This document shows, in pieces, positions 1-61,980 of a stretch of 64,000 bases of DNA. Origin of the DNA: Stegostoma tigrinum (taxonomy: Eukaryota); the NCBI RefSeq assembly GCF_030684315.1, contig NC_081387.1, positions 6,304,497 to 6,368,496 on the forward strand, in the 5' to 3' direction. The notes below the pieces were generated by a model, which saw only the letters and a program-made list of their open reading frames with translations, did not search any database and was not told the origin of the DNA. A program made the translations under genes and the position numbers. Position 1 is the first letter of the stretch. Every line of letters begins with the position of its first letter.

Positions 1-3000
1 CTTCCTGACACAGTCTCACCCTCCCAGACACTGTTAAAACCCACCAGACTAAATTCACTCCTATCCTGATCCTGCCTCACCCTCCCGGACACTGTTAAAA
101 CCCACCAGACTAAATTCACTCCCTTCCTGACCCAGTCTCACCCTCCCAGACACTGTTAAAACCCACCAGACTAAATTCACTCCTATCCTGATCCTGCCTC
201 ACCCTCCCAGACAGTGTAAAAACCCACCAGACTAAATTCACTCCCTTCCTGACCCAGTCTCACCCTCCCAGACACTGTTAAAACCCACCAGACTAAATTC
301 ACTCCAATCCATAGCCTGCCTCACCCTCCCAGACACTGTTAAAACCCACCAGACCAATTCACTCCCTTCCTGACCGTGTCTCACCCTCCTAGACGCTGTT
401 AAAACCCACCAGACTAAATTCACTCCCATCCATACCCTGCCTCACCCTCCCAGGCACTGTTAAAACCCACCAGACTAAATTCACTCCCTTCCTGACCCAG
501 TCTCACCCTCCCGGACACTGTTAAAACCCACCAGACCAATTCACTCCCTTCCTGACCCAGTCTCACCCCCCCAGACACTGTTTAAACCCACCAGACTAAA
601 TTCACTCCCTTCCTGATCCTGTCTCACCCTCCCGGACACTGTTTAAACCCACCAGACTAAATTCACTCCCTTCCTGACCCAGTCAAACCCTCCCGGACAC
701 TGTTAAAACCCACCAGACTAAATTCACTCCTATCCTGATCCTGCCTCACCCTCCCAGACACTGTTAAAACCCACCAGACTAAACTCACTCCCTTCCTGAC
801 CCAGTCTCACCCTCCCAGGCACTGTTAAAACCCACCAGACTAAATTCACTCCCTTCCTGACCCAGTCAAACCCTCCCGGACACTGTTAAAACCCACCAGA
901 CTAAACTCACTCCTATCCTGATTCTGCCTCACCCTCCCAGATGGAGTTAAAACCCACCAGACTAAATTCACTCCCTTCCTGAACCAGTCAAACCCTCCCG
1001 GACACTGTTAAAACCCACCAGACTAAATTCACTCCTATCCTGATCCTGCCTCACCATCCCTGATGCAGTTAAAACCCACCAGACTAAATTCACTCCCTTC
1101 CTGACCCTGTCTCACCCTCCCGGACACTGTTAAAAACCCACCAGACTAAATTCACTCCCTTCCTGGCCCAGTCTCACCCTCCCGGACACTGTTAAAACCC
1201 ATCAGACTAAATTCACTCCCCCGCCCCGATCCTGCCTCACCCTTTCGGACACTGTTAAAACCCACCAGACTAAATTCACTCCCTTCCTGACCCAGTCTCA
1301 CCCTCCCAGACACTGTTAAAACCCACCAGACTAAATTCACTCCTATCCTGATCCTGCCTCACTCTCCCAGACAGTGTTAAAACCCACGAGACTAAATTCA
1401 CTCCCTTCCTGACCCAGTCTCACCCTCCGAGACACTGTGAAAACCCACCAGACTAAATTCTCTCCTATCCTGATCCTGCCTCACTACCCCCAGACACTGT
1501 TAAAACCCACCAGACTAAATTCACTCCCTTCCTGATCCTGCTCACCCTCCCAGATGCAGTTAAAACCCACCAGACTAAATTCACTCCCTTCCTGATCCTG
1601 CCTCACCCTCCCAGACACTGTTTAAACCCACCAGACTAAATTCACTCCCTTCCTGACCCAGTCTCACCCTCCCAGACATTGTTAAAACCCACCAGACTAA
1701 ATTGACTCCTATCCTGATCCTGCCTCACCGTCCCAGACACTGTTAAAACCCACCAGACTAAATTCACTCCCTTCCTGACCCAGTCTCACCCTCCCGGACA
1801 CTGTTAAAACCCACCAGACTAAATTCACTCCCCCCTGCCGATCCTGCCACACCCTCCCGGACACTGTTAAAACCCACCAGACCAATTCACTCCCTTCCTG
1901 ATCCAGTCTCACCCTCCCGGACACTGTTAAAACCCACCAGACCAATTCACTCCCTTCCTGACCCTGTCTCACCCTCCCAGATGCAGTTAAAACCCACCAG
2001 ACCAAATTCACTCCCTTCCTGACCCAGTCTCACCCTCCCGGACACTGTTAAAACACACCAGACTAAATTCACTCCCTTCCTGACCCTGTCTCACCCTCCC
2101 GGACACTGCTAAAACCCACCAGACCAATTCACTCCCTTCCTGACCCTGTCTCACCCTCCCAGACACAGTTAACACCCACCAGACTAAATTCACTCCTATC
2201 CTGATTCTGCCTCACCCTCCCAGACACTGTTAAAACCCACCAGACTAAATTCACTCCTATCCTGATCCTGCCTCACCCTCCCGGACACTGTTAAAACCCA
2301 CCAGACAAAATTCACTCCCTTCCTGACCCAGTCTCACCCTCCCAGACACTGTTACAACCCACCAGACTAAATTCACTCCTATCCTGATCCTGCCTCACCC
2401 TCCCAGATGCAGTTAAAACCCACCAGACTAAATTCACTCCCTTCCTGACCCAGTCAAACCCTCCCAGACACTGTTAAAACCCACCAGACTAAATTCACTC
2501 CCTTCCTGACCCAGTCTCACCCTCCCAGACACTGTGAAAACCCACCAGACTAAATTCACTCCTATCCTGATCCTTCCTCACCACCCCCAGACACTGTTAA
2601 AACCCACCAGACTAAATTCACTCCCTTCCTCACCCAGTCTCACCCTCCCAGACACTGTTAAAACCCACCAGACTAAATTCACTCCCCCCCGATCCTGCCT
2701 CACCCTCCCGGACACTGTTAAAACCCACCAGACTAAAATCACTCCCCCCGGCCGATCCTGCCTCACCCTCCCGGACACTGTTAAAACCCACCAGACTAAA
2801 TTCACTCCCATCCATACCCTGCCTCACCCTCCCAGGCACTGTTAAAACCAACCAGACTAAATTCACTCCCTTCCTGACCCAGTCTCACCCTCCCAGACAC
2901 TGTTTAAACCCACCAGACTAAATTCACTACTATCCTGATCCTGCCTCACTCTCCCAGACAGTGTTAAAACCCACGAAACTAAATTCACTCCCTTCCTGAC

Positions 3001-6000
3001 CCAGTGTCACCCTCCCAGACACTGTGAAAACCCACCAGACTAAATTCACTCCTATCCTGATCCTGCCTCACCACCCCCAGACACTGTTAAAACCCACCAG
3101 ACTAAATTCACTCCTTTCCTGATCCTGCCTCACCCTCCCAGATGCAGTTAAAACCCACCAGACTAAATTCACTCCCTTCCTGATCCTGTCTCACCCTCCC
3201 GGACACTGTTTAAAACCACCAGACTAAATTCACTCCCTTCCTGACCCAGTCTCACCCTCCCAGACACTGTTAAAACCCACCAGACGAAATTCACTCCTAT
3301 CCTGATCCTGCCTCACCGTCCCAGACACTGTTAAAACCCACCAGACTAAATTCACTCCCTTCCTGACCCAGTCTCACCCTCCCGGACACTGTTGAAACCC
3401 ACCAGACTAAATTCACTCCAATCCATAGCCTGCCTCACCCTCCTAGGCACTGTTAAAACCCACCAGACTAAATTCACTCCTATCCTGATCCTCCCTCACC
3501 GTCCCAGACACTGTTAAAACCCACCAGACTAAATTCACTCCCTTCCTGACCCATTCTCACCCTCCCAGATGCAGTTAAAACCCACCAGAGTAAATTCACT
3601 CCCTTCCTGATCCTGCCTCACCCTCCCGGACACTGTTAAAACCCACCAGACCAATTCACTCCCTTCCTGACCCAGTCTCACCCCCCCAGACACTATTTAA
3701 ACCCACCAGACTAAATTCACTCCATTCCTGATCCTGTCTCACCCTCCCGGACACTGTTTAAACCCACCAGACTAAATTCACTCCCTTCCTGACCCAGTCA
3801 AACCCTCCCGGACACTGTTAAAACCCACCAGACTAAATTCACTCCTATCCTGATCCTGCCTCACCCTCCCAGACACTGTTAAAACCCACCAGACTAAATT
3901 CACTCCATTCCAGACCCAGTCTCACCCTCCCAGGCACTGTTAAAACCCACCAGACTAAATTCACTCCCTTCCTGACCCAGTCAAACCCTCCCGGACACTG
4001 TTAAAACCCACCAGACTAAACTCACTCCTATCCTGATTCTGCCTCACCCTCCCAGATGCAGTTAAAACCCACCAGACTAAATTCACTCCCGTCCTGACCC
4101 AGTCAAACCCTCCCGGACACTGTTAAAACCCACCAGACTAAATTCACTCCTATCCTGATTCTGCCTCACCATCCCTGATGCAGTTAAAACCCACCAGACT
4201 AAATTCACTCCCTTCCTGACCCTGTCTCACCCTCCCGGACACTGTTAAAAACCCACCAGACTAAATTCACTCCCTTCCTGACCCAGTCTCACCCTCCCGG
4301 ACACTGTTAAAACCCACCAGACTAAATTCACTCCCCCGCCCCGATCCTGCCTCACCCTTTCGGACACTGTTAAAACCCACCAGACTAAATTCACTCCCAA
4401 CCATACCCTGCCTCACCCTCCCAGGCACTGTTAAAACCCACCAGACCAAATTCACTCCCTTCCTGACCCAGTCTCACCCTCCCAGACACTGTTAAAACCC
4501 ACCAGACTAAATTCACTCCTATCCTGATCCTGCCTCACTCTCCCAGACAGTGTTAAAACCCACGAGACTAAATTCACTCCCTTCCTGATCCTGTCTCACC
4601 CTCCCGGACACTGTTTAAACCCACCAGACTAAATTCACTCCCTTCCTGATCCTGTCTCACCCTCCCGGACACTGTTTAAACCCACCAGACTAAATTCACT
4701 CCCTTCCTGACCCAGTCAAACCCTCCCGGACACTGTTAAAACCCACCAGACTAAATTCACTCCTATCCTGATCCTGCCTCACCCTCCCAGACACTGTTAA
4801 AACCCACCAGACTAAATTCACTCCATTCCTGACCCAGTCTCACCCTCCCAGGCACTGTTAAAACCCACCAGACTAAATTCACTCCCTTCCTGACCCAGTC
4901 AAACCCTCCCGGACACTGTTAAAACCCACCAGACTAAACTCACTCCTATCCTGATTCTGCCTCACCCTCCCAGATGCAGTTAAAACCCACCAGACTAAAT
5001 TCACTCCCGTCCTGACCCAGTCAAACCCTCCCGGACACTGTTAAAACCCACCAGACTAAATTCACTCCTATCCTGATTCTGCCTCACCATCCCTGATGCA
5101 GTTAAAACCCACCAGACTAAATTCACTCCCTTCCTGACCCTGTCTCACCCTCCCGGACACTGTTAAAAACCCACCAGACTAAATTCACTCCCTTCCTGAC
5201 CCAGTCTCACCCTCCCGGACACTGTTAAAACCCACCAGACTAAATTCACTCCCCCGCCCCGATCCTGCCTCACCCTTTCGGACACTGTTAAAACCCACCA
5301 GACTAAATTCACTCCCAACCATACCCTGCCTCACCCTCCCAGGCACTGTTAAAACCCACCAGACTAAATTCACTCCCTTCCTGACCCAGTCTCACCCTCC
5401 GAGACACTGTGAAAACCCACCAGACTAAATTCTCTCCTATCCTGATCCTGCCTCACTACCCCCAGACGCTGTTAAAACCCACCAGACTAAATTCACTCCC
5501 TTCCTGATCCTGCTCACCCTCCCAGATGCAGTTAAAACCCACCAGACTAAATTCACTCCCTTCCTGATCCTGCCTCACCCTCCCAGACACTGTTTAAACC
5601 CACCAGACTAAATTCACTCCCTTTCTGACCCTGTCTCACCCTCCCGGACACTGTTAAAACCCACCAGACGAAATTCACTCCCTTCCTGACCCAGTCTCAC
5701 CCTCCCAGACAATGTTAAAACCCACCAGACTAAATTGACCCCTATCCTGATCCTGCCTCACCCTACCAGACACTGTTAAAACCCACCAGACTAAATTCAC
5801 TCCTTTCCTGACCCAGTCTCACCCTCCCAGACACTGTTAAAACCCACCAGACTAAATTCACTCCCCCCTGCCGATCCTGCCTCACCCTCCCGGACACTGT
5901 TAAAACCCACCAGACCAATTCACTCCCTTCCTGATCCAGTCTCACCCTCCCGGACACTGTTAAAACCCACCAGACTAAATTCACTCCCTTCCTGACCCAG

Positions 6001-9000
6001 TCTCACCCTCCCGGACACTGTTAAAACCCACCAGACTAAATTCACTCCCCCGCTGAACCTGCCTCACCCTCCCGGACACTGTTGAAACCCACCAGACTAA
6101 ATTCACTCCAATCCATAGCCTGCCTCACCCTCCTAGGCACTGTTAAAACCCACCAGACTAAATTCACTCCTATCCTGATCCTGCCTCACCGTCCCAGACT
6201 CTGTTAAAACCCACCAGACTAAATTCACTCCCTTCCTGACCCAGTCTCACCCTCCCGGACACTGTTAAAACCCACCAGACTAAATTCACTCCCCCCCTGA
6301 ACCTGCCTCACCCTCCCGGACACTGTTGAAACCCACCAGACTAAATTCACTCCAATCCATAGCCTGCCTCACCCTCCTAGGCACTGTTAAAACCCACCAG
6401 ACTAAATTCACTCCTATCCTGATCCTGCCTCACCGTCCCAGACACTGTTAAAACCCACCAGACTAAATTCACTCCCTTCCTGACCCATTCTCACCCTCCC
6501 AGATGTAGTTAAAACCCACCAGAGTAAATTCACTCCCTTCCTGATCCTGCCTCACCCTCCCGGACACTGTTAAAACCCACCAGACCAATTCACTCCCTTC
6601 CTGACCCAGTCTCACCCCCCCAGACACTGTTTAAACCCACCAGACTAAATTCACTCCCTTCCTGATCCTGTCTCACCCTCCCGGACACTGTTTAAACCCA
6701 CCAGACTAAATTCACTCCCTTCCTGACCCAGTCAAACCCTCCCGGACACTGTTAAAACCCACCAGACTAAATTCACTCCTATCCTGATCCTGCCTCACCC
6801 TCCCAGACACTGTTAAAACCCACCAGACTAAATTCACTCCATTCCTGACCCAGTCTCACCCTCCCGGGCACTGTTAAAACCCACCAGACTAAATTCACTC
6901 CCTTCCTGACCCAGTCAAACCCTCCCGGACACTGTTAAAACCCACCAGACTAAACTCACTCCTATCCTGATTCTGCCTCACCCTCCCAGATGCAGTTAAA
7001 ACCCACCAGACTAAATTCACTCCCGTCCTGACCCAGTCAAACCCTCCCGGACACTGTTAAAACCCACCAGACTAAACTCACTCCTATCCTGATTCTGCCT
7101 CACCCTCCCAGATGCAGTTAAAACCCACCAGACTAAATTCACTCCCTTCCTGACCCTGTCTCACCCTCCCGGACACTGTTAAAAACCCACCAGACTAAAT
7201 TCACTCCCTTCCTGACCCAGTCTCACCCTCCCGGACACTGTTAAAACCCACCAGACTAAATTCACTCCCCCGCCCCGATCCTGCCTCACCCTTTCGGACA
7301 CTGTTAAAACCCACCAGACTAAATTCACTCCCATCCATACCCTGCCTCACCCTCCCAGGCACTGTTAAAACCTACCAGACTAAATTCACTCCCTTCCTGA
7401 CCCAGTCTCACCCTCCCAGACACTGTTAAAACCCACCAGACTAAATTCACTCCTATCCTGATCCTGCCTCACTCTCCCAGACAGTGTTAAAACCCACGTG
7501 ACTAAATTCACTCCCTTCCTGACCCAGTCTCACCCTCCGAGACACTGTGAAAACCCACCAGACTAAATTCTCTCCTATCCTGATCCTGCCTCACTACCCC
7601 CAGACGCTGTTAAAACCCACCAGACTAAATTCACTCCCTTCCTGATCCTGCTCACCCTCCCAGATGCAGTTAAAACCCACCAGACTAAATTCACTCCCTT
7701 CCTGATCCTGCCTCACCCTCCCAGACACTGTTTAAACCCACCAGACTAAATTCACTCCCTTTCTGACCCTGTCTCACCCTCCCGGACACTGTTAAAACCC
7801 ACCAGACGAAATTCACTCCCTTCCTGACCCAGTCTCACCCTCCCAGACAATGTTAAAACCCACCAGACTAAATTGACCCCTATCCTGATCCTGCCTCACC
7901 CTACCAGACACTGTTAAAACCCACCAGACTAAATTCACTCCTTTCCTGACCCAGTCTCACCCTCCCGGACACTGTTAAAACCCACCAGACTAAATTCACT
8001 CCTATCCTGATCCTTCCTCACCACCCCCAGACACTGTTGAAACCCACCAGACTAAATTCACTACCTTCCTGACCCAGTCTCACCCTCCCGGACACTGTTA
8101 AAACCCACCAGACTAAATTCACTACCCCGCTGAACCTGCCTCACCCTCCCGGACACTGTCAAACCCACCAGACTAAATTCACTCCCTTCCTGATCCTTCC
8201 TCACCCTCCCAGACACTGTTAAAAACCCACCAGACTAAATTCACTCCCTTCCTGACCCTGTCTCACCCTCCCAGATGCAATTAAAACCCACCAGACTAAA
8301 TTCACTCCCTTCCTGATCCTGCCTCACCCTCCCAGACACTGTTTAAACCCACCAGACTAAATTCACTCCCTTCCTGATCCTTCCTCACCCTCCCAGACAC
8401 TGTTAAATACCCACCAGACTAAATTCACTCCCTTCCTGACCCTGTCTCAACCACCCAGACACTGTTGAAACCCACCAGACTAAATTCACTCCCTTCCTGA
8501 CCATGCCTCACCGTCCCAGACACTGTTAAAACCCACCAGACTAAATTCACTACCTTCCTGACCCAGGCTCACCCTCCCGGACACTGTTAAAACCCACCAG
8601 ACTAAATTCACTCCCCCGCTGAACCTGCCTCACCCTCCCGGACACTGTTGAAACCCACCTGACTAAATTCACTCCAATCCATAGCCTGCCTCACAATCCT
8701 AGGCACTGTTAAAACCCACCAGACTAAATTCACTCCCTTCCTGACCCAGTCTCACCCTCCCAGATGCAGTTAAAACCCACCAGACTAAATTCACTCCCTT
8801 CCTGATCCTGCCTCACCCTCCCAGACACTGTTTAAACCCACCAGACTAAATTCACTCCCTTCCTGATCCTTCCTCACCCTCCAATACACTGTTAAAAACC
8901 CACCAGACTAAATTCACTCCCTTCCTGACCCTGTCTCACCCTCCCGGACACTGTGAAAACCCACCAGACTAAATTCACTCCTATCCTGATCCTTCCTCAC

Positions 9001-12000
9001 CACCCCCAGACACTTTTAAAACCCACCAGACTAAATTCACTCCCTTCCTGACCCAGTCTCATCCTCCCAGACACTGTTTAAACCCACCAGACTAAATTCA
9101 CTCCCCCCCGATCCTGCCTCACCCTCCCGGACACTGTTAAAACCCACCAGACTAAATTCACTCCCCCGTGCCGATCCTGCCTCACCCTCCCGGACACTGT
9201 TAAAACCCACCAGACTACATTCACTCCCATCCATACCCTGCCTCACCCTCCCAGGCACTGTTAAAACCAACCAGACTAAACTCACTCCCTTCCTGACCCA
9301 GTCTCACCCTCCCAGACACTGTTTAAACCCACCAGACTAAATTCACTCCTATCCTGATCCTGCCTCACTCTCCCAGACAGTGTTAAAACCCGCGAGACTA
9401 AATTCACTCCCTTCCTGATCCAGTCTCACCCTCCCAGACACTGTGAAAACCCACCAGACTAAATTCACTCCTATCCTGATTCTGCCTCACCCTCCCAGAC
9501 ACTGTTAAAACCCACCAGACTAAATTCACTCCCTTCCTGTTCCGGCCTCACCCTCCCAGATGCAGTTAAAACCCACCAGACAAAATTCACTCCCTTCCTG
9601 ATCCTGTCTCACCCTCCCAGACACTGTTTAAACCCTCCAGACTAAATTCACTCCCTTCCTGACCCTGTCTGACCCTCCCGGACACTGTTAAAACCCACCA
9701 GACTAAATTCACTCCCTTCCTGACCCAGTCTCACCCTCCCAGACACTGTTAAAACCCACCAGACTAAATTCACTCCTATCCTGATCCTGCCTCACCGTCC
9801 CAGACACTGTTAAAACCCACCAGACTAAATTCACTCCCTTCCTGACCCAGTCTCACCCTCCCGGACACTGTTGAACCCCACCACACTAAACTCACTCCCC
9901 CCCTGAACCTGCCTCACCCTCCCAGACACTGTTGAAACCCACCAGACTAAATTCACTCCAATCCATAGCCTGCCTCACCCTCCTAGGCACTGTTAAAACC
10001 CACCAGACTAAATTCACTCCCTTCCTGATCCAGTCTCACCCGCCCAGATGCAGTTAAAACCCACCAGACTAAATTCACTCCCCCCCCCGAATCCTGCCTC
10101 ACCCTCCCGGACACTGTTAAAACCCACCAGACTAAATTCACTCCCTTCCTGACCCAGTCTCACCCTCCCGGACACTGTTAAAACCCACCAGACTAACTTC
10201 ACTCCCCCCCTGATCCTGCCTCACCCTCCCGGACACTGTTAAAACCCACCAGACTAAATTCACTCCCATCCATACCCTGCCTCACCCTCCCAGGCACTGT
10301 TAAAACCCACCAGACTAAATTCACTCCCTTCCTGACCCAGTCTCACCCTCCCAGACACTGTTTAAACCCAGCAGACTAAATTCACTCCTATCCTGATCCT
10401 GCCTCACCCTCCCAGACACTGTTAAAACCCACCAGACTAAATTCACTCCCTTCCTCACCCAGTCAAACCCTCCCGGACACTGTTAAAACCCACCAGACTA
10501 AATTCTCTCCTATCCTGATCCTGCCTCACCCTCCCAGATGCAGTTAAAACCCACCAGACTAAATTCACTCCCTTCCTGACCCTGTCTCACCCTCCCGGAC
10601 ACTGTTAAAACCCACCAGACTAAATTCACTCCCTTCCTGACCCAGTCTCACCCTCCCGGACACTGTTAAAACCCACCAGACTAAATTCACTCCCTTCCTG
10701 ACCCAGTCAAACCCTCCGGGACACTGTTAAAACCCACCAGACTAAATTCACTCCTATCCTGATCCTGCCTCACCCTCCCAGATGCAGTTAAAACCCACCA
10801 GACTAAATTCACTCCCTTCCTGACCCAGTCAAACCCTCCCAGACACTGTTAAAACCCACCAGACTAAATTCACTCCTATCCTGATCCTGCCTCACCCTCC
10901 CGGACACTGTTAAAACCCACCAGACTAAATTCACTCCCTTCCTGACGCAGTCTCACCCTCCCAGACACTGTTAAAACCCAGCAGACTAAATTCACTGCCC
11001 CCCCCCGATCCTGCCTCACCCTCCCGGACACTGTTAAAACCCACCAGACTAAATTCACTCCCATCCATACCCTGCCTCACCCTCCCAGGCACTGTTAAAA
11101 CCCACCAGACTAAATTCACTCCCTTCCTGACCCAGTCTCACCCTCCCAGACACTGTGAAAACCCACCAGACTAAATTCACTCCTATCCTGATCCTGCCTC
11201 ACCACCCCCAGACACTGTTAAAACCCACCAGACTAAATTCACTCCCTTCCTGATCCTGCCTCACCCTCCCAGATGCAGTTAAAACCCACCATTCTAAATT
11301 CACTCCCTTCCTGATCCTGCCTCACCCTCCCAGACACTGTTTAAACCCACCAGACTAAATTCACTCCCTTCCTGACCCTGTCTCACCTTCCCGTACACTG
11401 TTAAAACCCACCAGACCAATTCACTCCCTTCCTGACCCTGTCTCACCCTCCCAGACACTGTTAAAACCCACCAGACTAAATTCACTCCTATCCTGATCCT
11501 GCCTCACCCTCCCGGACACTGTTAAAACCCACCAGACTAAATTCACTCCCTTCCTGACCCAGTCTCACCCTCCCAGACACTGTTAAAACCCACCAGACTA
11601 AATTCACTCCCTTCCTGACCCAGTCTCACCCTCCCGGATACTGTTAAAACCCACCAGACCAATTCACTCCCTTCCTGACCCTGTCTCACCCTCCCAGACA
11701 CTGTTAAAACCCACCAGACTAAATTCACTCCTATCCTGATCCTGCCTCACCCTCCCAGATGCAGTTAAAACCCCCCAGACTAAATTCACTCCCTTCCTGA
11801 CCCAGTCTCACCCTCCCGGACACTGTTAAAACCCACCAGACCAATTCACTCCCTTCCTGACCCTGTCTCACCCTCCCAGACACTGTTAAAACCCACCAGA
11901 CTGAATTCACTCCTATCCTGATTCTGCCTCACCCTCCCAGACACTGTTAAAACCCACCAGACTAAATTCACTCCCTTCCTGACCCAGTCTCACCCTCCCA

Positions 12001-15000
12001 GACACTGTTAAAACCCACCAGACTAAATTCACTCCTATCCTGATCCTGCCTCACCCTCCCAGACAGTGTAAAAACCCACCAGACTAAATTCACTCCCTTC
12101 CTGACCCAGTCTCACCCTCCCGGACACTGTTAAAACCCAACAGACTAAATTCACTTCCCCCCTGATCCTGCCTCACCCTCCCGGACACTATTAAAACCCA
12201 CCAGACGAAATTCACTCCCTTCCTGACCCAGTCCCTCCCTCCCGGACACTGTTAAAACCCAACAGACTAAATTCACTCCCTTCCTGACCCAGTCTCACCC
12301 TCCCAGACACTGTTAAAACCCACCAGACTAAATTCACTCCTATCCTGATCCTGCCTCACCCTCCCAGACACTGTTAAAACCCACCAGACTAAATTCACTC
12401 CCTTCCTGACCCAGTCTCACCCTCCCAGACACTGTTAAAACCCACCAGACTAAATTCACTCCTATCCTGATCCTGCCTCACCCTCCCAGACACTGTTAAA
12501 ACCCACCAGACTAAATTCACTCCCTTCCTGACCCAGTCTCACCCTCCCGGACACTGTTAAAACCCAACAGACTAAATTCACTCCCTTCCTGATCCTGCCT
12601 CACCCTCCCAGATGCAGTTAAAACCCACCATTCTAAATTCACTCCCTTCCTGATCCTGCCTCACCCTCCCAGACACTGTTTAAACCCACCAGACTAAATT
12701 CACTCCCTTCCTGACCCTGTCTCACCTTCCCGTACACTGTTAAAACCCACCAGACCAATTCACTCCCTTCCTGACCCTGTCTCACCCTCCCAGACACTGT
12801 TAAAACCCACCAGACTAAATTCACTCCTATCCTGATCCTGCCTCACCCTCCCGGACACTGTTAAAACCCACCAGACTAAATTCACTCCCTTCCTGACCCA
12901 GTCTCACCCTCCCAGACACTGTTAAAACCCACCAGACTAAATTCACTCCCTTCCTGACCCAGTCTCACCCTCCCGGATACTGTTAAAACCCACCAGACCA
13001 ATTCACTCCCTTCCTGACCCTGTCTCACCCTCCCAGACACTGTTAAAACCCACCAGACTAAATTCACTCCTATCCTGATCCTGCCTCACCCTCCCAGATG
13101 CAGTTAAAACCCCCCAGACTAAATTCACTCCCTTCCTGACCCAGTCTCACCCTCCCGGACACTGTTAAAACCCACCAGACCAATTCACTCCCTTCCTGAC
13201 CCTGTCTCACCCTCCCAGACACTGTTAAAACCCACCAGACTGAATTCACTCCTATCCTGATTCTGCCTCACCCTCCCAGACACTGTTAAAACCCACCAGA
13301 CTAAATTCACTCCCTTCCTGACCCAGTCTCACCCTCCCAGACACTGTTAAAACCCACCAGACTAAATTCACTCCTATCCTGATCCTGCCTCACCCTCCCA
13401 GACACTGTTAAAACCGACCAGACTAAATTCACTCCCTTCCTGACCCAGTCTCACCCTCCCGGACACTGTTAAAACCCAACAGACTAAATTCACTTCCCCC
13501 CTGATCCTGCCTCACCCTCCCGGACACTATTAAAACCCACCAGACGAAATTCACTCCAATCCATACCCTGCCTCACCCTCCTAGGCACTTGTAAAGCCCA
13601 CCAGACTAAATTCACTCCCTTCCTGACCCAGTCTCACCCTCCCAGACACTATTAATACCCACCAGACTAAATTCACTCCTATCCTGATCCTGCCTCACCC
13701 TCCCAGACACTGTTAAAACCCACCAGACTAAATTCACTCCCTTCCTGACACAGTCTCACCCTCCCAGACACTGTTAAAACCCAGCAGACTAAATTCACTC
13801 CTATCCTGATCCTGCCTCATCCTCCCAGACACTGTTAAAACCCACCAGACTTAATTCACTCCCTTCCTGACCCAGTCTCACCCTCCCGGACACTGTTAAA
13901 ACCCACCAGACTAACTTCACTCCCCCCCTGATCCTGCCTCACCCTCCCGGACACTGTTAAAACCCACCAGACTAAATTCACTCCCATCCATACCCTGCCA
14001 CACCCTCCCAGGCACTGTTAAAACCCACCAGACTAAATTCACTCCCTTCCTGACCCAGTCTCACCCTCCCAGACACTGTTTAAACCCAGCAGACTAAATT
14101 CACTCCTATCCTGATCCTGCCTCACCCTCCCAGACACTGTTAAAACCCACCAGACTAAATTCACTCCCTTCCTGACCCAGTCAAACCCTCCCGGACACTG
14201 TTAAAACCCACCAGACTAAATTCACTCCTATCCTGATCCTGCCTCACCCTCCCAGATGCAGTTAAAACCCACCAGACTAAATTCACTCCCTTCCTGACCC
14301 AGTCAAACCCTCCCAGACACTGTTAAAACCCACCAGACTAAATTCACTCCTATCCTGATCCTGCCTCACCCTCCCAGACACTGTTAAAACCCACCAGACT
14401 AAATTCACTCCCTTCCTGACGCAGTCTCACCCTCCCAGACACTTTTAAAACCCAGCAGACTAAATTCACTCCTATCCTGATCCTGTCTAACCCTCCCAGA
14501 CACTGTTAAAACCCACCAGACTAAATTCACTCCCTTCCTGACCCAGTCTCACCCTCCCGGACACTGTTAAAACCCACGAGACAAATTCACCCCCTTCCTG
14601 ACCCTGTCTCACCCTCCCGGACACTGTTAAAACCCACCAGACTAAATTCACTCCCTTCCTGACCCAGTCTCACCCTCCCAGACACTGTTTAAACCCACCA
14701 GACTAAATTCACTCCCTTCCTGATCCTGCCTCACCCTCCCAGACACTGTTTAAACCCACCAGACTAAATTCACTCCCTTCCTGACCCAGTCTCACCCTCC
14801 CGGACACTGTTAAAACCCACCAGACTAACTTCACTCCCCCCCTGATCCTGCCTCACCCTCCCGGACACTGTTAAAACCCACCAGACTAAATTCACTCCCA
14901 TCCATACCCTGCCTCACCCTCCCAGGCACTGTTGAAACCCACCAGACTAAGTTCACTCCCTTCCTGAACCAGTCTCACCCTCCCAGACACTGTTTTAACC

Positions 15001-16328
15001 CACCAGACTAAATTCACTCCTATCCAGATCCTGCCTCACCCTCCCAGACACTGTTAAAACCCACCAGACTAAATTCACTCCTATCCTGATCCTGCCTCAC
15101 CCTCCCAGATGCAGTTAAAACCCACCAGACAAAATTCACTCCCTTCCTGACCCTGTCTCACCCTCCCGGACACTGTTAAAACCCACCAGACTAAATTCAC
15201 TCCCTTCCTGACCCAGTCTCACCCTCCCAGACACTGTTAAAACCCACCAGACTAAATTCACTTCCTTCCTGACCCAGTCAAACCCTCCGGGACACTGTTA
15301 AAACCCACCAGACTAAATTCACTCCTATCCTGATCCTGCCTCACCCTCCCAGATGCAGTTAAAACCCACCAGACTAAATTCACTCCCTTCCTGACCCAGT
15401 CAAACCCTCCCAGACACTGTTCAAACCCACCAGACTAAATTCACTCCTATCCTGATCCTGCCTCACCCTCCCAGATGCAGTTAAAACCCACCAGACTAAA
15501 TTCACTCCCTTCCTGACCCAGTCAAACCCTCCCAGACACTGTTAAAACCCACCAGACTAAATTCACTCCCTTCCTGACCCAGTCAAACCCTCCCGGACAC
15601 TGTTAAAACCCACCAGACTAAATTCACTCCTATCCTGATCCTGCCTCACCCTCCCTGATGCAGTTAAAACCCACCAGACTAAATTCACTCCCTTCCTGAC
15701 CCTGTCTCACCCTCCCGGACACTGTTAAAACCCACCAGACTAAATTCACTCCCTTCCTGACCCAGTCTCACCCTCCCAGACACTGTTAGAACCCACCAGA
15801 CTAAATTCACTCCCTTCCTGACCCAGTCAAACCCTCCGGGACACTGTTAAAACCCACCAGACTAAATTCACTCCTATCCTGATCCTGCCTCACCCTCCCA
15901 GATGCAGTTAAAACCCATCAGACTAAATTCACTCCCTTCCTGACCCTGTCTCACCCTCCCGGACACTGTTAAATCCCACCAGACTAAATTCACTCCTAAC
16001 CTGATCCTGCCTCACCCTCCCAAATGCAGTTAAAACCCACCAGACTACATTCACTCCCTTCCTGACCCTCTCTCACCCTTCCGGACACTTTTAAAACCCA
16101 CCAGACTAAATTCACTCCCTTCCTGACCCAGTCTCACCCTCCCGGACACTGTTAAAACCCACCAGACCAATTCACTCCCTTCCTGACCCTGTCTCACCCT
16201 CCCAGACTCTGTTAAAACCCACCAGACTAAAGTCACTCCCTTCCTGACCCTGTCTCACCCTCCCGGACAGTGTTTAAACCCACCAGACTAAATTCACTCC
16301 CTTCCATCCCCTGCCTCACCCTCCTAGA
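1..16328 (+). repeat. 61-bp tandem satellite array (~267 monomers; begins upstream of the window)
   Basis: Consensus CACTCCCTTCCTGACCCAGTCTCACCCTCCCAGACACTGTTAAAACCCACCAGACTAAATT (61 nt) repeats continuously. Main variants are ...CCCTTCCTGACCCAGTCTCA and ...CCTATCCTGATCCTGCCTCA. The array ends at ~16328. Confidence 0.99.
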
Positions 16329-16495
16329 AACTTCATTGTCGATGTTTCCTTCTGACAGGTACTGCCCTTCGACTCATCGGCTGGGGTTGTTGCTTTGGGG
16401 TCAATGTCATGAGCCAAGGTGTTGTCTCACTTCGCCAGGTCTCATTTCAACACCTTCAGCTCTTGTCACACCCTCTGCCCACTACTCCACCATAT

Positions 16496-28066: not shown

Positions 28067-28067
28067 A

Positions 28068-28122
28068 GACTAGTTTCACTCCCCTCCTGACTCCGTCCCT
28101 CCCTCTCACTCACTGTTAAAAC
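28068..28122 (+). repeat. Solitary degenerate monomer of the 61-bp satellite
   Basis: gactagtttcactcccctcctgactccgtccctccctctcactcactgttaaaac aligns to the consensus at roughly 80% by eye. Confidence 0.75.
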
Positions 28123-41500: not shown

Positions 41501-44085
41501 TTCCAGCAATGGCACTGAAGCCTTATTCCTTAACCATACCCTTCCAGTACAGTTACGACTTTGATGTCTAGTGGGACAGTGTGGAAAATTGCCCAGGTAC
41601 GTTATGGAGAAAAAAAAGTAGGAAAAATCCAACCTGGCCAATTACCACCCGAACAGTCAACTCTCGATCATCAGTAAAGTGATGGAAGGTGTCATGAAGA
41701 GTGCTATCCAGCAGCACTTGCTCAGCAATAACCTGCTCAGTATTGACTAGTTTGGGTTCCATGAGGGCCACTCAGCTCCTGACCTCACTACAGCCTTCGT
41801 TCAAACAGTGACAAAAGAGCTCAACTCCAGAGGTAAGGTGATAGCGACAGCCCTTGACAGCGATTCTGCATTTGACTGAGTGTGCATCAAGGAGGCCAGG
41901 CAAAACTGGAATCAATGGGCACAGAGGACAAACTCTCCCCTGGATAGAGTTATACATGGCACATAGTACAGTGTTGTTCTTGCTGGAGGTCAGTCAGCTC
42001 AGCTCCAGGACTTCTCTGCAGGAATTCCTCAGGACATTTTCCCAGGAGCAACCATCTTCAACTACTTCATCATTTAGCTTCCCTCTATCATCTGATCAGG
42101 AGTGGGAAATTTTGCCAATGATTGCAGAGTGTTCAGCTCCACACATGACTTCTCTAAGTTCAAATGCAACAAGATCTGCACAATACCCAGGCTGAGGCTG
42201 ACAAGTAAACTTCGTGCCACACAAATGCCAGGTAGTGTTCATCTCCAATAACAAACCATTTAACCATCGCCCATTGATATTCAATGGTGTTGCCATCACA
42301 GAATCCTCCACTACCAACATCTTTGAGGTTACCTTTGACCAGAAACCCAAACACATAAACACCACGGCTACAAGACCAATTCAAATGCGAGGAATACAGC
42401 AGTCAGTAACTCATTTCCTGACTCCCCAAAGCCCATCCACCATCGACAAGGTACAGGCCAGGAATGTAACAAATATTCCCATTTGCCATGATGGGTGCAG
42501 CTCCAATAACAAGAAGCTTTTCAACATCCAGGACAAAGTGGCCAGCCTGATTGGCACTGTATTCACAAGCATCCACTCCCTCCACCACTGACGCTCAGTA
42601 GCAGAAGTGTGTACTGTCTACAAGTAATTCAAAGATTCTTAGCGAGCACCTTCCAAGATCTTACATCTAGAAGGACAAGGGCAGCAGATATGTGGAAACA
42701 GACGCACCTCCAAGCTCCCTGCCAAACCACTTCCCATCCGGACTTAGAAATATTTCATTGATCGTCCACTGTCATTGGGTCAAAATCCTGGGATTTCCTC
42801 TCCAATGACATTGTGGGTCCACCCAGAGAGTGTGGACTGCAGTGGTTTATGAAGGCAGCTTACCACCAACTTCTCAAGGGCATCTAGTGCCGGGAAATAA
42901 GATACTAGCATGCCAGCAATACAAATGAATTTAAAAACTTCATGATAATCATGGCGTTATAAAATTCACTACATTTAACCTCTCCTAATCTCTCAAAGAC
43001 AGGAAAATGTTCCAACTTGTTTTTCTCAGGTTTAACAGGAATGATCTCACATTTCCCCACATTGGATAAAAACATAATGGTTGGAATTCGCTCATTTCAT
43101 CTGTCAATGTCCTTTCATTCTTCCTCCTAACTAATGTCATCGGAAAACATGGATATAAACCCACAGACCGGACAACTCAGTATTTACACTCCCGTTAATG
43201 GGATCTTTAGTGACTTCACTGGAGAGTGAAATTGACTGAAGGTCAACACAAAATTTTAACCAATTGCATCATTTCCCAGTGGGTGGGGTCAGTTAATATT
43301 GTTCCCATGAATACAGAACTGGGAACAGAAAAGTTTCTGATGTTTTTCCAATGTGTTTCAGAAACCACAGGAAACAGAGGGGAACGCATCCATCTTGGAA
43401 TGATACTTGGAATCCTTATTGCTGCAGTGTTCGGGATAATCGCAATGATCATTTGGATAAGGGCATGGAAAGGTAAGGATCATTGAGGAAGGGATGTGGA
43501 ACTGCATGGAGAGAGTGTGTAGGGAATCTCCAGCACTGGGAGGGAGGAGTGAGAGAATATCAGACTGATATTAACAAATTAACTTGTGCTCTCACTCTGA
43601 GAATTGATTATTCTAATGGACGTTTATTTTGTTTCTGCACGTGCATCAAGTGTGACAAATACACCAGTTTGCAGGAAGCAACTAAGGGGACAGAGTGTTG
43701 GGGAGTGGTGGATAAGGGATTGGGGAAAGCTGTCGAGTTACATTGTCCAGGTGTGATTCAGGGTGACACTTGTCTCCTCACTCTGTAGTCTCTCACCCCC
43801 CAGTTCTCTTATGCCCCCTCTTCCTCATCTTCATACCCCCAGGCCCACTCCCTCCAATCATCAACTGCTCAAATCCCTTATATCCCAATTCCTCTTTTCA
43901 GTTCTGCGCCCCTGTTCCCTCCCCCTTCTTCCCTCTGCGCTGTGCTGGTTAGCTGTTGCCAAGGGTGATTGAACCCGGATCTGGTAATTGATAGAGAATA
44001 TCTCACACTGTCACATTTGATATTTAATTTCTCATGCTATGTTTCTCCATCAGCTTCTGATGTCTCTGTTCCAGCTCATTCATGA
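29453..44085 (+). CDS. Gene A: nonclassical MHC class I heavy chain (shark; possibly UEA/UCA-like). join(29453..29504,32778..33038,35989..36264,36382..36660,43362..43472,44054..44085), ~336 aa
   Basis: Six exons with GT-AG borders and all introns phase 1. The spliced CDS of 1011 nt is open. Domain order is leader-alpha1-alpha2-alpha3(Ig C1)-TM-tail. The lineage name is inference. Confidence 0.9.
29529..29562. repeat. (CT)n microsatellite in gene A intron 1
   Basis: ttctctctccctctctctctctctctctgtctct. Confidence 0.85.
30460..30750 (-). mobile_element. CR1 LINE 3' end fragment
   Basis: Begins gaatcatagaatc (reverse-complement tail), followed by the RT C-terminal region. Confidence 0.7.
30750..32420 (-). 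mobile_element. Old LINE (CR1/L2 superfamily) RT region
   Basis: AKAMGPDNIPAKLLKTCAPE, GVQQG and MGMFADHC in minus-strand ORF fragments. Confidence 0.85.
32778..33038 (+). CDS. Gene A alpha1 exon (261 nt)
   Basis: ttagcag|GSDSLTVIYSAVYGIKDFPEV...IPRQQFM...KYWE...NQTSG|gtaag, with the conserved N86 glycosylation sequon NQT. Confidence 0.95.
33622..33820. mobile_element. Fold-back Penelope-derived mini-element with ~14-bp TSD
   Basis: Inverted arms (gctggatgaacacagcaggccaagca...gcaggaaagctgac / gtcagctttcctgc...tgcttggcctgctgtgttcatccagc). TSD aggaaatttacttt / acgaaagttacttt. Confidence 0.82.
34147..34316. mobile_element. Fold-back Penelope-derived mini-element
   Basis: ttaacatttcaggtccggtgacccttcctcagaac is followed by its inverted copy gttctgacaagggtcactggaccc. 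Flanks are ctccacttttttaa and ctccatttttaa. Confidence 0.7.
34390..34705 (+). mobile_element. HE1-like V-SINE (elasmobranch tRNA-derived SINE)
   Basis: A box tggctcagtagttag, B box ggtttgattcc, V-domain gtgtggagtttgtatgttctcccc...ggtttcctcccacagtccaaa, and a CR1-like tail. Confidence 0.85.
34995..35222 (-). mobile_element. tRNA-derived SINE
   Basis: Reverse-complement head ggggatcagatagctcagttggc ... ggtccaattccc (A and B box-like). Confidence 0.6.
35430..35870 (+). repeat. 39-bp minisatellite (~11 copies) in gene A intron 2
   Basis: Unit cagtccattcccaagcaccaactcctgcatcactccaca; it produces the 13-aa periodicity in spurious ORF 35364-35888. Confidence 0.92.
35989..36264 (+). CDS. Gene A alpha2 exon (276 nt)
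   Basis: ggcag|GIHTFQWIATVE...FGFDGKDFLSL...WIA...AVKTKEKWN...HLKQGFVQDLKRTLQAGKQYFERK-G|gtatat. Confidence 0.96.
36382..36660 (+). CDS. Gene A alpha3 (Ig C1) exon (279 nt)
   Basis: cacag|AQPEV...LSCRVTGFYPVDIEVTWLRNG...PNHDGTHQ...YSCQIEHSS...W-G|gtaag. Confidence 0.97.
36750..38125 (-). mobile_element. Old LINE (CR1/L2 superfamily), same family as 30750-32420
   Basis: WKFSRVCPVHEKQEKSNLANYCSIGLLS, ALDTKAVFH and MFANDYT in minus-strand fragments. Confidence 0.85.
38480..39545 (+). mobile_element. Degenerate CR1 RT C-terminal part and 3'UTR
   Basis: SPQLEYCV, RFTKMLSG, LEQRRLR and RFKVRG motifs. Confidence 0.8.
39612..40022 (-). mobile_element. PLE 3' region fragment with a degenerate hammerhead core
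   Basis: Reverse complement gttctgaggaacgggacaccagaccccaaaatgttcac, followed by the pLTR tail seen in the other PLE copies. Confidence 0.6.
40283..40455 (+). mobile_element. tRNA-derived SINE fragment (related copy at ~38130-38400)
   Basis: gggaggtgatggtctgatggtattatc...gttcgaatcccactgtggcaga...gaatttgaaatcaat. Confidence 0.6.
40530..42920 (+). mobile_element. Old LINE (CR1/L2 superfamily), endonuclease through 3'UTR
   Basis: Endonuclease remnants (..GYFNVH.., ILD, SDHC) and RT remnants (KSNLANY, GHSAPDL). Homologous to the minus-strand copies at 30.7 and 36.7 kb. Confidence 0.85.
43362..43472 (+). CDS. Gene A connecting peptide / transmembrane exon (111 nt)
   Basis: tttcag|ETTGNRGERIHLGMILGILIAAVFGIIAMIIWIRAWK-G|gtaag. 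Confidence 0.92.
43641..43673 (+). pseudogene. Dead 33-nt cytoplasmic exon of gene A (both splice sites mutated)
   Basis: tttctgcaC|...tttgca|gGaagc versus the intact paralog exon tttctgcaG|...ctcgca|gtaagt in copy C. The downstream intron sequence is also homologous. Confidence 0.75.
44054..44085 (+). CDS. Gene A last coding exon
   Basis: catcag|(A)SDVSVPAHS*; the same 32-nt exon is present in B (52566-52597) and C (61981-62012). Confidence 0.85.
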
Positions 44086-44143
44086 TTCAGTAAGTGATGT
44101 TTTATTCTCCCTCCATTGATGTACTTGTAACCAAACTACTCTG

Positions 44144-44213
44144 TCCTGGACCCTGTCTCACTCTCCCAGACACGGTTAAAACCTTTCGGACTAATTTCAC
44201 TCCAATCCTGACC
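44144..44213 (+). repeat. Solitary 61-bp satellite monomer just after the gene A stop codon
   Basis: tcctggaccctgtctcactctcccagacacggttaaaacctttcggactaatttcactccaatcctgacc. Confidence 0.88.
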
Positions 44214-44289
44214 GTGAAGAGACTAATTATCTTACCTCATGGGTACCTTGGGCTCTGCTACAGAATATTCCTTCCCAAATAGGAGGTGG

Positions 44290-44566
44290 TCCACTGGCTC
44301 AGTGGTTAGCACTGCTGCCTCACAGAGCCAGTTCAATTCCACACTTGGGCGACTGCAGTTTGCATCTCCTTCCTTTGGGTTTCCTCTGGGTGCTCCAGTT
44401 TCCTCTGACAGTTTACAGATGGGCAGGTTAGGTAGATTGGCTGTGGGAAACGTAGACTTACAGGGATTATGTAGGCCGGTGCTCAAGGTGTGATGCTCTT
44501 CAGGTGGCCAGTGAGGACTCAGTGGACCAAATAGCCTGCTTCCATGCTGTAGGAATGTTATGATTC
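44290..44566 (+). mobile_element. Degenerate HE1-like V-SINE
   Basis: tggctcagtggttagcactgctgcctcacag ... gggtttcctctgggtgctccagtttcctc. Confidence 0.8.
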
Positions 44567-45115
44567 CCAAAGTCTCTTTGAGAAATGAATGGATTCCCTG
44601 TTCTGGCGTGAACATGGACATCATTGTTGATCCTGCCATATCATGGCTCACACGGAATTGCAGTTTATTGTTTGCACACAGTTCTTTCAGGAATGCAATT
44701 AAATGTTCCTGGGAATATGTTTCCACAGATTGAACAGCGTATCCCAGATCTGCATGTTGTGATCCTCAGTCACCAAGTCAGGCCTTCTGAAGTTATGTTT
44801 TCATCCTGCCTCGGAATGTGAGCAGTGTTTCCATCAGAGGGATCTTCATGGACAGTTTCTCCCTCACACTTTCTCATTTTCAATGTCTTCACCCTTTCAC
44901 AATTTGCCTGAAATGAAACAATGTCCAAAGGCAACTTCTAAGCACTTTTTATATTGCAGGGTATGTTTGCTTTTGTACTTTAATTCACCAAATGTGACCT
45001 CTTACGTAACATACTGTTGTAAATTGAATACTTACAGTCTACTTATTGAGAAAGCATCTTTATCTATGTACTATCAATGTTTACCTACAAATGCTGATAA
45101 TTGTGGTTTGTAATC

Positions 45116-45121
45116 AATAAA
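45116..45121 (+). terminator. Candidate polyadenylation signal of gene A
   Basis: AATAAA followed by T/GT-rich sequence, inside the 3' region homologous to copy C (AACAAA at the same position in C). Confidence 0.5.
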
Positions 45122-52597: not shown

Positions 52598-52674
52598 TTC
52601 AATCAGTGATATTTTTGCTTTTCTGCATGGATCCTATTGTGATTGTCAATGTTTTCCCCATTGCTATGATTAGA

Positions 52675-53779: not shown

Positions 53780-54022
53780 CTCAGTTGAAATGAGTGCTTT
53801 GTATGTGTCCATTCCTTACCTGGGTGTCCTGGGGTCTACTGCAGGACATTTCCAGAGCCTTATTGAGGAATAGTGAGATTCTCTCATTCCAGTGCGAATA
53901 TGAACATCGTCGCCCATCCTTCCATACCACAGCAGATGCATAGAATTACATCGTGTTATTCACCCATAATTCATTCATGATTGGATTTGATATTCCTGGA
54001 CTGTTCCCCTCACACTTTCTCA
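53780..54022 (+). other. 3' region (3'UTR homolog) of pseudogene B
   Basis: Aligns with gene A ~44230-44880 and the reverse complement of ~61470-61850 (e.g. gaggaata..g.gattctc, catccttc.ata.cacagcaga, ccctcacactttctca). Confidence 0.7.
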
Positions 54023-61857: not shown

Positions 61858-61925
61858 GGGATGGAGTGAAATCAGTCCGACAGGTTTTAAAAATGTCTGC
61901 GAGGGTGAGGCAGGGTCAGGAGGGA
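61858..61925 (-). repeat. Solitary satellite monomer just after the copy C stop codon
   Basis: Reverse complement tccctcctgaccctgcctcaccctcgcagacatttttaaaacctgtcggactgatttcactccatccc. Confidence 0.85.
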
Positions 61926-61980
61926 TGTAAAAATGTTACAAATAAGTCTACGGAGAGAAGTTGACATGCCACTTACTGAA

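What the first reader, a model, noticed from the sequence alone, without database searches (positions are those of the whole stretch)
1..16328. The 16-kb satellite monomer also occurs singly just after the stop codon of two MHC class I paralogs
Seen: single ~70-80% identical monomers lie 56-59 bp downstream of the stop codon in gene A (44144-44213, + strand) and copy C (61858-61925, - strand), in gene orientation each time. A further solitary copy is at 28068-28122 and a very weak trace at ~53490-53522 in B. Inference: the monomer is an ancestral part of this gene family's 3' end (3'UTR, or an intron opened by the conserved ttca|gtaagt just after the stop). The array has the same orientation as gene A, so it may be a runaway expansion inside an upstream paralog, i.e. 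a satellite born from immune-gene sequence that could drive unequal crossing-over in the cluster.
Basis: partly seen in the sequence, partly recalled or inferred. Interest (0 to 1): 0.8.

Follow-up and report, generated by a model that had tools for sequence, protein, structure and literature searches.

The report
Shark MHC intron repeat grown into satellite
A 61-base DNA unit that sits once in the last intron of several zebra-shark MHC class I genes has been copied head to tail into an array of at least 16 kb next to them: a clear but fairly ordinary case of a satellite sharing its unit with gene-internal DNA.

Summary
Window 1-16332 is one uninterrupted array of a 61-bp unit (267.5 copies). 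Outside the array, a profile of its units hits only three places: 44144-44216 (+, gene A), 61925-61851 (-, gene C) and 28067-28122 (+).

The A and C copies start 58 and 55 nt after the stop codon, in gene orientation. They lie inside a 2-kb block that A and C share at 66-70% identity, so the unit predates the A/C duplication.

Spliced transcript contigs show that ttca|gtaagt is a used donor. The unit therefore lies in a 639-bp intron (44090-44728) placed after the stop codon, not in the mature 3'UTR.

Whether the array grew inside an upstream paralog remains open, because its left junction lies outside the window. In favour: the same orientation, a 72-bp match between the array's right flank and gene C's distal 3' flank, and unchecked scan notes of a class I gene about 9 kb upstream. 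Against: no terminal exon follows the array.

Whole-genome contigs do not pile up on the A-type unit, unlike the neighbouring SINE. No function is shown.

The parts
1..16332 (+). Uninterrupted array of a 61-bp unit, 267.5 copies. It runs off the left edge of the window, so its true length is unknown. The strand is C-rich, each unit has a ~20-bp inner periodicity, and there is no strict higher-order repeat.
   Evidence: TRF. GC skew is -0.62. 267 abutting units. Mean pairwise identity is 89%; a 13-unit block recurs at a 22-unit offset and a 12-unit block at a 15-unit offset. Self-match at lag 20 is 32/61 against 13-23 at other lags.
16331..16401 (+). Right flank of the array. It is homologous to gene C's distal 3' flank (60622-60551) in gene orientation. 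The last array unit is cut at about unit position 28.
   Evidence: blastn gives 71-72% over 72-74 bp, E 4e-5 to 5e-6. A degenerate 30-mer pattern (3 ambiguity positions) drawn from the two copies, which agree at 27 of these 30 bases, has only these 2 matches in the window at up to 3 mismatches, with 0 expected. Alignment.
28067..28122 (+). Solitary 0.92 unit that runs across a unit junction (phase 46-61 then 1-40), so it comes from at least two tandem units. It lies 1.26 kb upstream of gene A's first exon, and a Penelope-like element abuts its left edge.
   Evidence: (82.1%, z=20). Other copies of the Penelope tail continue differently, so the unit is not part of that element.
43361..43472 (+). 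Gene A transmembrane exon.
   Evidence: tblastn with P0002. RNA contigs cover it with 0 mismatches.
44054..44089 (+). Gene A 36-nt tail exon encoding ASDVSVPAHS*, with the stop at 44083-44085. It is included in one transcript contig and skipped in two.
   Evidence: Joints 43470->44052 (cut +2) and 44089->44729 in X5; joint 43470->44727 (cut +2) in X6 and X7. Sequence.
44090..44728 (+). Intron placed after the stop codon (GT..AG, 639 bp). It holds the solitary unit and a SINE.
   Evidence: Spliced contig X5 record 9. The donor and acceptor are conserved in C.
44144..44216 (+). Solitary unit of gene A: one full unit plus the first 13 nt of a second.
44271..44561 (+). SINE insertion in gene A's last intron. 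It is absent from C.
   Evidence: The A/C homology breaks at 44270 and resumes at 44562. Whole-genome contigs pile up here enormously (summed depth 1.6 million against about 50).
44729..45121 (+). Gene A terminal, non-coding exon. The RNA contig reaches 45066 and an AATAAA lies at 45116-45121.
61851..61925 (-). Solitary unit of gene C (1.26 units), inside C's homologous last intron (61976-61613).
61977..62012 (-). Gene C 36-nt tail exon (…SDVPVAFTS*, stop at 61983-61981), followed by ttca|gtaagt.
52566..52601 (+). Pseudogene B tail exon (ASEVSVPAPS*). Its donor is mutated from GT to AT. About 1.05 kb of inserted, repeat-like DNA follows before homology resumes at 53786.
53786..53990 (+). B's homologue of the sequence that directly follows C's unit. 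The ~70 bp before it (about 53712-53785) are the decayed positional equivalent of the unit.
   Evidence: 70.7% over 208 bp, E 4e-31. Alignment. No significant unit match.

Best explanation
The genes are members of an expanded non-classical MHC class I family of the zebra shark (Stegostoma tigrinum). Their last coding exon is a 36-nt mini-exon whose stop codon sits 4 nt before a splice donor. An intron therefore follows the stop.

Shown:
- The intron carries about 1.2 copies of a C-rich 61-bp unit, itself built from three ~20-bp sub-repeats.
- The unit was already there before genes A and C split.

Inferred:
- At one site the same unit was multiplied by replication slippage and then unequal sister-chromatid or interallelic exchange, giving an array of at least 267 units.
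- That site is most likely the 3' end of a paralog lying just upstream of the window.
- The array keeps turning over by unequal exchange of blocks of 12-22 units, which also keeps it free of transposon insertions in a transposon-dense region.
- The amplified version has gained extra C-runs (G-runs on the other strand). This may make it prone to replication stalling, but that was not tested.

I take the array to be a by-product of repeat dynamics rather than a device. My odds: unit ancestral to the family's last intron, about 0.9; array is the expanded copy of a paralog's intronic unit, about 0.55-0.6.
For: Array anatomy.

Only three places outside the array match the unit, and all three are highly significant.

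The unit is old:
- The A and C 3' regions are collinear from the transmembrane exon to about 1 kb past the unit, at 66-70% identity.
- The unit is 82.3% identical between A and C.
- B keeps the flank at the same position.

The unit is intronic:
- Transcript contigs with 0 mismatches join 43472|44054 and 44089|44729 (GT..AG). Others join 43472|44729, which reproduces the annotated isoform P0002 ending in WKD.

Relationship of the copies:
- A, C and the array consensus are about equidistant (84%, 82% and 82%).
- A and C group together apart from all 152 distinct array units (support 0.72). So the array had one founder that is neither A nor C.
- Within-array K2P distance is 0.12, against 0.31-0.36 for the A/C introns. 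Homogenisation of the array is therefore younger than the gene duplication.

The array may sit at a paralog's 3' end:
- Its right flank matches C's 3' flank in the same order and orientation.
- Unchecked scan notes place class I exons 9.3-20 kb before the window, with the leader to the left of alpha2, i.e. in + orientation. In gene A, alpha2 lies 8.2 kb before the unit.

Not a common dispersed repeat:
- Whole-genome contigs at 80% likeness or more give summed depth 46-100 on the unit, against 1.6 million on the adjacent SINE.
Against: - The array's left junction was not seen.
- No homologue of the family's acceptor or terminal exon follows the array. If this was a paralog, about 1.2 kb including that exon has been lost.
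- The flank match is short (72-100 bp, 71%) and could be the end of an old mobile element present at both places.
- The copy at 28067-28122 lies 11.7 kb beyond that flank and spans a unit junction. This fits a once-longer or second array better than a single in-situ expansion.
- The contig-depth test would not detect array-type units elsewhere in the genome, because they are about 79% like A's copy. Genome-wide spread of the satellite is therefore untested.
- The direction of descent (intron unit to array, or satellite fragment into intron) cannot be rooted from this window.
Confidence: 0.6

Rival explanations
1. Satellite first. The 61-bp satellite existed on its own, perhaps at several sites, and about 1.2 units were captured in the last intron of the ancestral gene before the A/C split. 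In this reading the array and the copy at 28067 are simply local blocks of that satellite in intergenic DNA, and the flank match is a shared old mobile-element end.
For: - All three solitary copies carry a unit junction: A and C have 1.2 units, and the third copy runs from phase 46 to 40. All therefore descend from a tandem state of at least two units.
- No terminal exon follows the array.
- In both places the flank homology starts sharply at the same base.
Against: - Nothing else in 48 kb of transposon-rich DNA matches the unit.
- Genome contigs do not pile up on the unit.
- The array's orientation, its position behind an upstream class I gene (unchecked) and the collinear flank match would all have to be coincidences.
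Confidence: 0.27
2. Functional element. The unit is a conserved cis-element of the last intron, for example a C-rich protein-binding site that tunes inclusion of the 36-nt tail exon. The array would then be an amplified block of such sites with an effect of its own, as a protein sink, a chromatin boundary or a recombination modulator.
For: - The unit is the best-conserved segment between A and C (82.3%, against 78% for the coding tail exon and 57-68% for the rest of the intron). P is about 0.009 against a uniform 68%, a post hoc test.
- A further paralog seen in genome contigs has eight indels in the spacer (44097-44148). None is listed within the unit, though the indel table is truncated.
- The tail exon is alternatively included or skipped.
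- In pseudogene B the unit has decayed more than its flank.
Against: - The conservation rests on 62 columns and two genes.
- There is no RNA structure (z between -0.3 and +0.5) and no Rfam match.
- No binding or splicing data exist.
- Array units vary freely (89% pairwise identity).
Confidence: 0.1
3. Chance resemblance or assembly artefact.
For: None was found. The array's length was not checked with long reads.
Against: - E-values of 2e-12 and 8e-11, and z-scores of 20-29.
- The array units carry structured variation and internal block duplications, which is unlike a collapsed or inflated assembly.
Confidence: 0.02

Closest known systems
Minisatellite or satellite arrays born by slippage and unequal crossing-over from a short local duplication (classical models of Smith, Stephan and Charlesworth; cited from my own knowledge)
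   Same: - Head-to-tail units with no coding capacity.
- A unit built from shorter sub-repeats.
- Block duplications inside the array.
- Homogenised units that form one group against older solitary relatives.
   Different: Here the solitary relatives sit at a defined, homologous place in paralogous genes (the intron after the stop codon). This gives the array a datable relative. The founder event itself was not seen.
Tandem repeats embedded in MHC genes, such as microsatellites or minisatellites in salmonid class I/II 3'UTRs and in DRB intron 2
   Same: A repeat that travels with an MHC gene lineage through duplications and lies in non-coding gene sequence.
   Different: Those stay short (tens to hundreds of bp) inside the gene. 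Here one copy has reached at least 16.3 kb and the others are single units.
Transposon-derived satellites
   Same: A solitary form together with a tandemly amplified form of the same sequence.
   Different: - The solitary copies are not independent insertions: the A/C homology runs through them.
- The unit is not part of the adjacent Penelope tail or SINE.
- There is no high copy number at 80% likeness or more.
Satellite-filled giant introns of Drosophila Y-linked genes (papers listed; cited from my own knowledge)
   Same: If the array lies in the last intron of the upstream paralog, it would be an intron swollen by satellite DNA.
   Different: No acceptor or terminal exon follows the array here, so an intact satellite-bearing intron is not supported.

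Membership tests
Satellite or minisatellite DNA | Head-to-tail copies of one unit, many copies, no interspersed unique DNA | tested here: met
   267.5 copies of 61 bp. The gap between successive units is 0 in 254 of 266 cases.
Satellite or minisatellite DNA | Concerted evolution: array units are closer to one another than to relatives outside the array | tested here: met
   Units average 92.5% identity to the consensus, against 79% to A and 77% to C. A and C fall outside all array units in the tree.
Satellite or minisatellite DNA | Length variation between individuals, or presence at several loci | not testable with these tools
Dispersed transposon-derived repeat | Many copies in unrelated contexts | tested here: not met
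   Three copies in 48 kb of transposon-rich DNA. Two are paralogous rather than independent. Genome contigs do not pile up at 80% likeness or more. Caveat: more diverged copies would be missed.
Dispersed transposon-derived repeat | The unit is a part of a recognisable element (SINE, LINE, Penelope) | tested here: not met
   The SINE is an A-specific insertion beside the unit. Other Penelope tails in the window continue with different sequence.
Spliceosomal intron after the stop codon (3'UTR intron) | GT..AG borders and a spliced transcript that removes the segment | tested here: met
   Joint 44089->44729 (GT..AG) in a 587-nt contig with 0 mismatches. The run type is not on record; I infer RNA because the contigs are spliced.
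Expanded shark MHC class Ib family (UBA or UEA) | Class I alpha1/alpha2 and C1-set alpha3 domains, multicopy, in a shark genome | tested here: met
   Pfam MHC_I and C1-set hits. 104 shark relatives, five of them from Stegostoma tigrinum. Three copies lie in this window.
Expanded shark MHC class Ib family (UBA or UEA) | Assignment to one named lineage by phylogeny with reference sequences | not tested
   No named reference sequences were at hand. The papers only state that UBA and UEA are the two expanded families.

The most novel reading that the evidence does not exclude
The 61-bp unit is a selected cis-element of the intron that follows the stop codon in this class Ib family, controlling inclusion of the 36-nt tail exon. 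Its 16-kb amplification, in a version with added G-quadruplex or i-motif potential, would then act on the cluster, for example as a sink for the binding factor or as a fragile, recombination-prone boundary between paralogs.
Probability: 0.08. Interest if true: 0.6.

Novelty: new member of a known kind. Interest (0 to 1): 0.33.

Why it matters
Satellites rarely come with an identifiable, datable single-copy relative. Here the same unit sits at a homologous place in paralogous immune genes. This lets one ask when and from what the array arose and how fast it turns over in a slowly evolving genome.

The finding also fixes a detail of these little-studied shark class Ib genes. A 36-nt tail exon is followed by an intron after the stop codon, and that exon is alternatively skipped, which changes the cytoplasmic tail.

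None of this changes what is known about satellite biology or MHC function. It is a tidy example and a possible marker for tracing duplications in the cluster.

Tried and rejected
- **Fetching upstream DNA and other sharks' loci.** The array's left junction and cross-species checks were therefore out of reach.
- **Metagenome contig scans.** One scan used a degenerate unit pattern and one a tail-exon/donor pattern. Both were blank, which says nothing either way.
- **Earlier notes by sequence.** Blank for both the flank motif and the array.
- **Post-unit flank after the array.** I looked for the sequence that follows the unit in A and C right after the array and after the 28067 copy. There was nothing significant.
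- **More collinear homology.** I compared the array's flank with the downstream regions of C, A and B. Only the 72-bp match turned up, plus shared transposons.
- **Edge gradient.** Units at the right edge of the array are no more similar to the solitary copies than interior ones.
- **Strict higher-order repeat.** Rejected. Identity is flat at 0.875-0.898 over the unit offsets tested (1-30, 44 and 66).
- **Structured RNA or known RNA family.** Rejected.
- **Unit as part of the Penelope tail.** Rejected.
- **Literature.** I found no paper on this repeat or on a satellite in the zebra-shark MHC.
- **Joined spliced gene model.** None was built or searched. Exons were read singly, and the one protein search used a natural open frame of the window (36042-36755).
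Full report
**What is there**

Window 1-16332 is a single tandem array of a 61-bp unit: 267.5 copies with 86% matches. The plus strand is strongly C-rich, with a GC skew of about -0.62.

Cutting the array with a profile gives 267 abutting units of 60-62 bp, with nothing inserted between them. Units average 92.5% identity to the consensus and 89% to one another.

There is no strict higher-order repeat. A block of 13 units recurs at an offset of 22 units and a block of 12 at an offset of 15. That is the footprint of unequal exchange inside the array.

The unit has an inner period of about 20 bp: 32 of 61 self-matches at lag 20, against 13-23 at neighbouring lags. The array runs off the left end of the window, so 16.3 kb is a minimum length.

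**The solitary copies**

A profile built from the array units finds only three places in the other 47.7 kb:

| Place | Strand | E-value |
|---|---|---|
| 44148-44203 | + | 2e-12 |
| 61921-61863 | - | 8e-11 |
| 28085-28122 | + | 0.02 |

Every other hit has E>3. Aligned to a tandem consensus with shuffle controls, the copies are as follows:

| Copy | Coordinates | Units | Identity | z |
|---|---|---|---|---|
| Gene A | 44144-44216 | 1.18 | 84.9% | 29 |
| Gene C | 61925-61851 | 1.26 | 80.5% | 25.6 |
| Third copy | 28067-28122 | 0.92 (phase 46 to 40) | 82.1% | 20 |

The stop codons are at 44083-44085 and 61983-61981. The unit therefore begins 58 and 55 nt after the stop, in gene orientation in both genes.

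B's counterpart of the sequence that directly follows C's unit starts at 53786 (70.7% over 208 bp). What precedes it is too decayed to score.

**The genes**

The exons carry MHC_I and C1-set domains. The closest proteins are annotated class I chains of Stegostoma tigrinum and other sharks. P0002, an annotated isoform from that species, matches the window's exons at 29378-43474.

- Gene A is on the plus strand.
- B is a fragment: alpha2, the first 28 nt of alpha3, and a tail exon whose donor is mutated.
- C is on the minus strand, with its 5' part beyond the window.

Sharks have two expanded non-classical families, UBA and UEA. I did not resolve which one this is.

**The unit is old and sits in an intron**

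The A and C 3' regions are collinear at 66-70% identity, from the transmembrane exon to about 1 kb past the unit. A 291-bp SINE is inserted in A only. The unit was therefore present before A and C separated.

I laid the contigs of four public runs of this species on 42900-45600. Three small runs have no recorded type, but their contigs are spliced, so I take them to be RNA.

- One 587-nt contig with no mismatch joins the transmembrane exon (ending at 43472) to 44054-44089, and then 44089 to 44729 (GT..AG).
- Two others join 43472 directly to 44729. This reproduces the annotated isoform ending in WKD.
- A loose end of one contig reads the end of gene A's alpha3 exon. These are therefore mRNAs of this gene.

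So ttca|gtaagt is a used donor. The unit and the SINE lie in a 639-bp intron after the stop codon, and the 36-nt tail exon (ASDVSVPAHS*) is alternatively skipped. Donor and acceptor are conserved in C, whose intron is 61976-61613.

**How the copies relate**

A, C and the array consensus are about equally distant from one another (84%, 82% and 82%). In a tree, A and C pair up (support 0.72) apart from all 152 distinct array units. The array thus descends from one founder that was neither A's nor C's copy.

The K2P distance is 0.31-0.36 between the A and C introns and 0.12 within the array. Homogenisation of the array is younger than the gene duplication, but not recent.

Between A and C, the unit is the best-conserved segment of the region:

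| Segment | A/C identity |
|---|---|
| Unit | 82.3% |
| Tail exon | 78% |
| Rest of the intron | 57-68% |

This gives P of about 0.009 against a uniform 68%, a post hoc test. It is a hint of constraint and no more. There is no RNA structure and no Rfam match.

**Is it a common dispersed repeat?**

Within the window, no. Whole-genome contigs laid at 80% likeness or more give a summed depth of 46-100 over the unit, close to the roughly 40-110 of the unique flanks. The SINE next to it reaches 1.6 million.

The unit is not part of that SINE. It is also not part of the Penelope-like element that abuts the 28067 copy: other copies of that element's tail in the window continue with different sequence.

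This test has a limit. Array-type units are only about 79% like A's copy. Arrays elsewhere in the genome would therefore not have been laid.

**Did the array grow inside an upstream paralog?**

This could not be settled.

In favour:
- The array has gene A's orientation.
- Its right flank (16331-16401) matches C's 3' flank at 60622-60551, in gene orientation and in the expected order, about 1.24 kb past C's unit. Identity is 71-72% with E of 5e-6 to 4e-5. The two copies agree at 27 of the first 30 bases, and a degenerate pattern of that 30-mer has no other match in the window.
- Unchecked notes of this scan place class I exons 9.3-20 kb before the window, with the leader to the left of alpha2, i.e. 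in + orientation. In gene A, alpha2 lies 8.2 kb before the unit. An upstream gene's 3' end would therefore fall close to where the array must begin.

Against:
- Nothing after the array resembles the family's acceptor or terminal exon. A paralog there would have lost about 1.2 kb.
- The flank match is short and fades after about 100 bp. It could be the end of an old mobile element.
- The 28067 copy lies 11.7 kb beyond that flank and crosses a unit junction. It descends from a tandem state and hints at a once-longer or second array.
- All three solitary copies contain a unit junction. The ancestor therefore already had at least 1.2-2 tandem units, which leaves the direction of descent open.

**Mechanism and consequences**

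The initial duplication most likely arose by slippage, followed by unequal exchange. These are inferences from the anatomy and from the classical models of tandem-repeat evolution.

The idea that the solitary copies drive unequal crossing-over in the cluster is not supported. They are 56-77 bp long and 80-85% like the array consensus, which is a poor recombination substrate by general knowledge.

The amplified unit has five C-runs, against two in A's copy and three within the unit proper of C's copy. The array holds 115 canonical four-run motifs, against 2-3 in the rest of the window. A tendency to form G-quadruplex or i-motif structures, and so to stall replication, is possible but untested.

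**Verdict**

The unit is an old resident of the intron that follows the stop codon in this class Ib family. The array is the same unit amplified nearby. Its birth inside a paralog is plausible but unproven.

It is a new member of a known kind of sequence, of moderate-to-low general interest.

Noticed in passing
window 43472 / 44054-44089 / 44729: Gene A makes two tail isoforms. With the 36-nt exon the protein ends …AWKASDVSVPAHS*. Without it, it ends …AWKD*, as in the annotated isoform P0002. One transcript contig shows inclusion and two show skipping.
   Followed up: partly
window 43641-43673 (A) versus 62437-62405 (C, minus strand): Gene C and the paralog P0006 have a 33-nt cytoplasmic exon (DSQSGTYTTAR…). 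In gene A both of its splice sites are mutated (AG to AC, GT to GG), and the transcript contigs skip it. Gene A's tail therefore lacks 11 residues, including the tyrosine.
   Followed up: partly
window 17807-19361 (+) and 54745-56289 (-): Two LINE reverse-transcriptase copies, 95% identical over 1.55 kb, lie in inverted orientation on either side of gene A and pseudogene B. They are a possible substrate for an inversion of the 35 kb between them.
   Followed up: no
window 44097-44203 joined to 44649 (seen only in public-run contigs): One genome contig and one transcript contig carry a closer paralog, or a divergent allele, of gene A's last intron. It has eight indels in the spacer before the unit and lacks 44204-44648, including the SINE. 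A second genome contig (86% identity, 44423-44731) shares the SINE. More copies of this 3' module therefore exist elsewhere in the genome.
   Followed up: no
window 35436-35857: A C-rich 39/78-bp minisatellite (10.8 copies of 39 bp) lies in gene A's intron between alpha1 and alpha2. It is not detectably related to the 61-bp unit.
   Followed up: partly
window 51046-51549: A 35-bp tandem repeat (14.4 copies, 89% matches) lies just upstream of pseudogene B.
   Followed up: no
window 16590-16830 (-) and 17807-19361 (+): A LINE fragment on the minus strand ends where the plus-strand LINE copy begins in protein coordinates (…DKSPGPD…AKKE, then …EVAKPLAKIF). This looks like a 5'-inverted (twin-priming-type) LINE insertion, 230 bp to the right of the array.
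   Followed up: no
window 1-16332, minus strand: The array carries 115 four-run G3 motifs with loops of 7 nt or less, against 2-3 in the other 47.7 kb. The extra run comes from array-specific substitutions at unit positions 43-47.
   Followed up: partly
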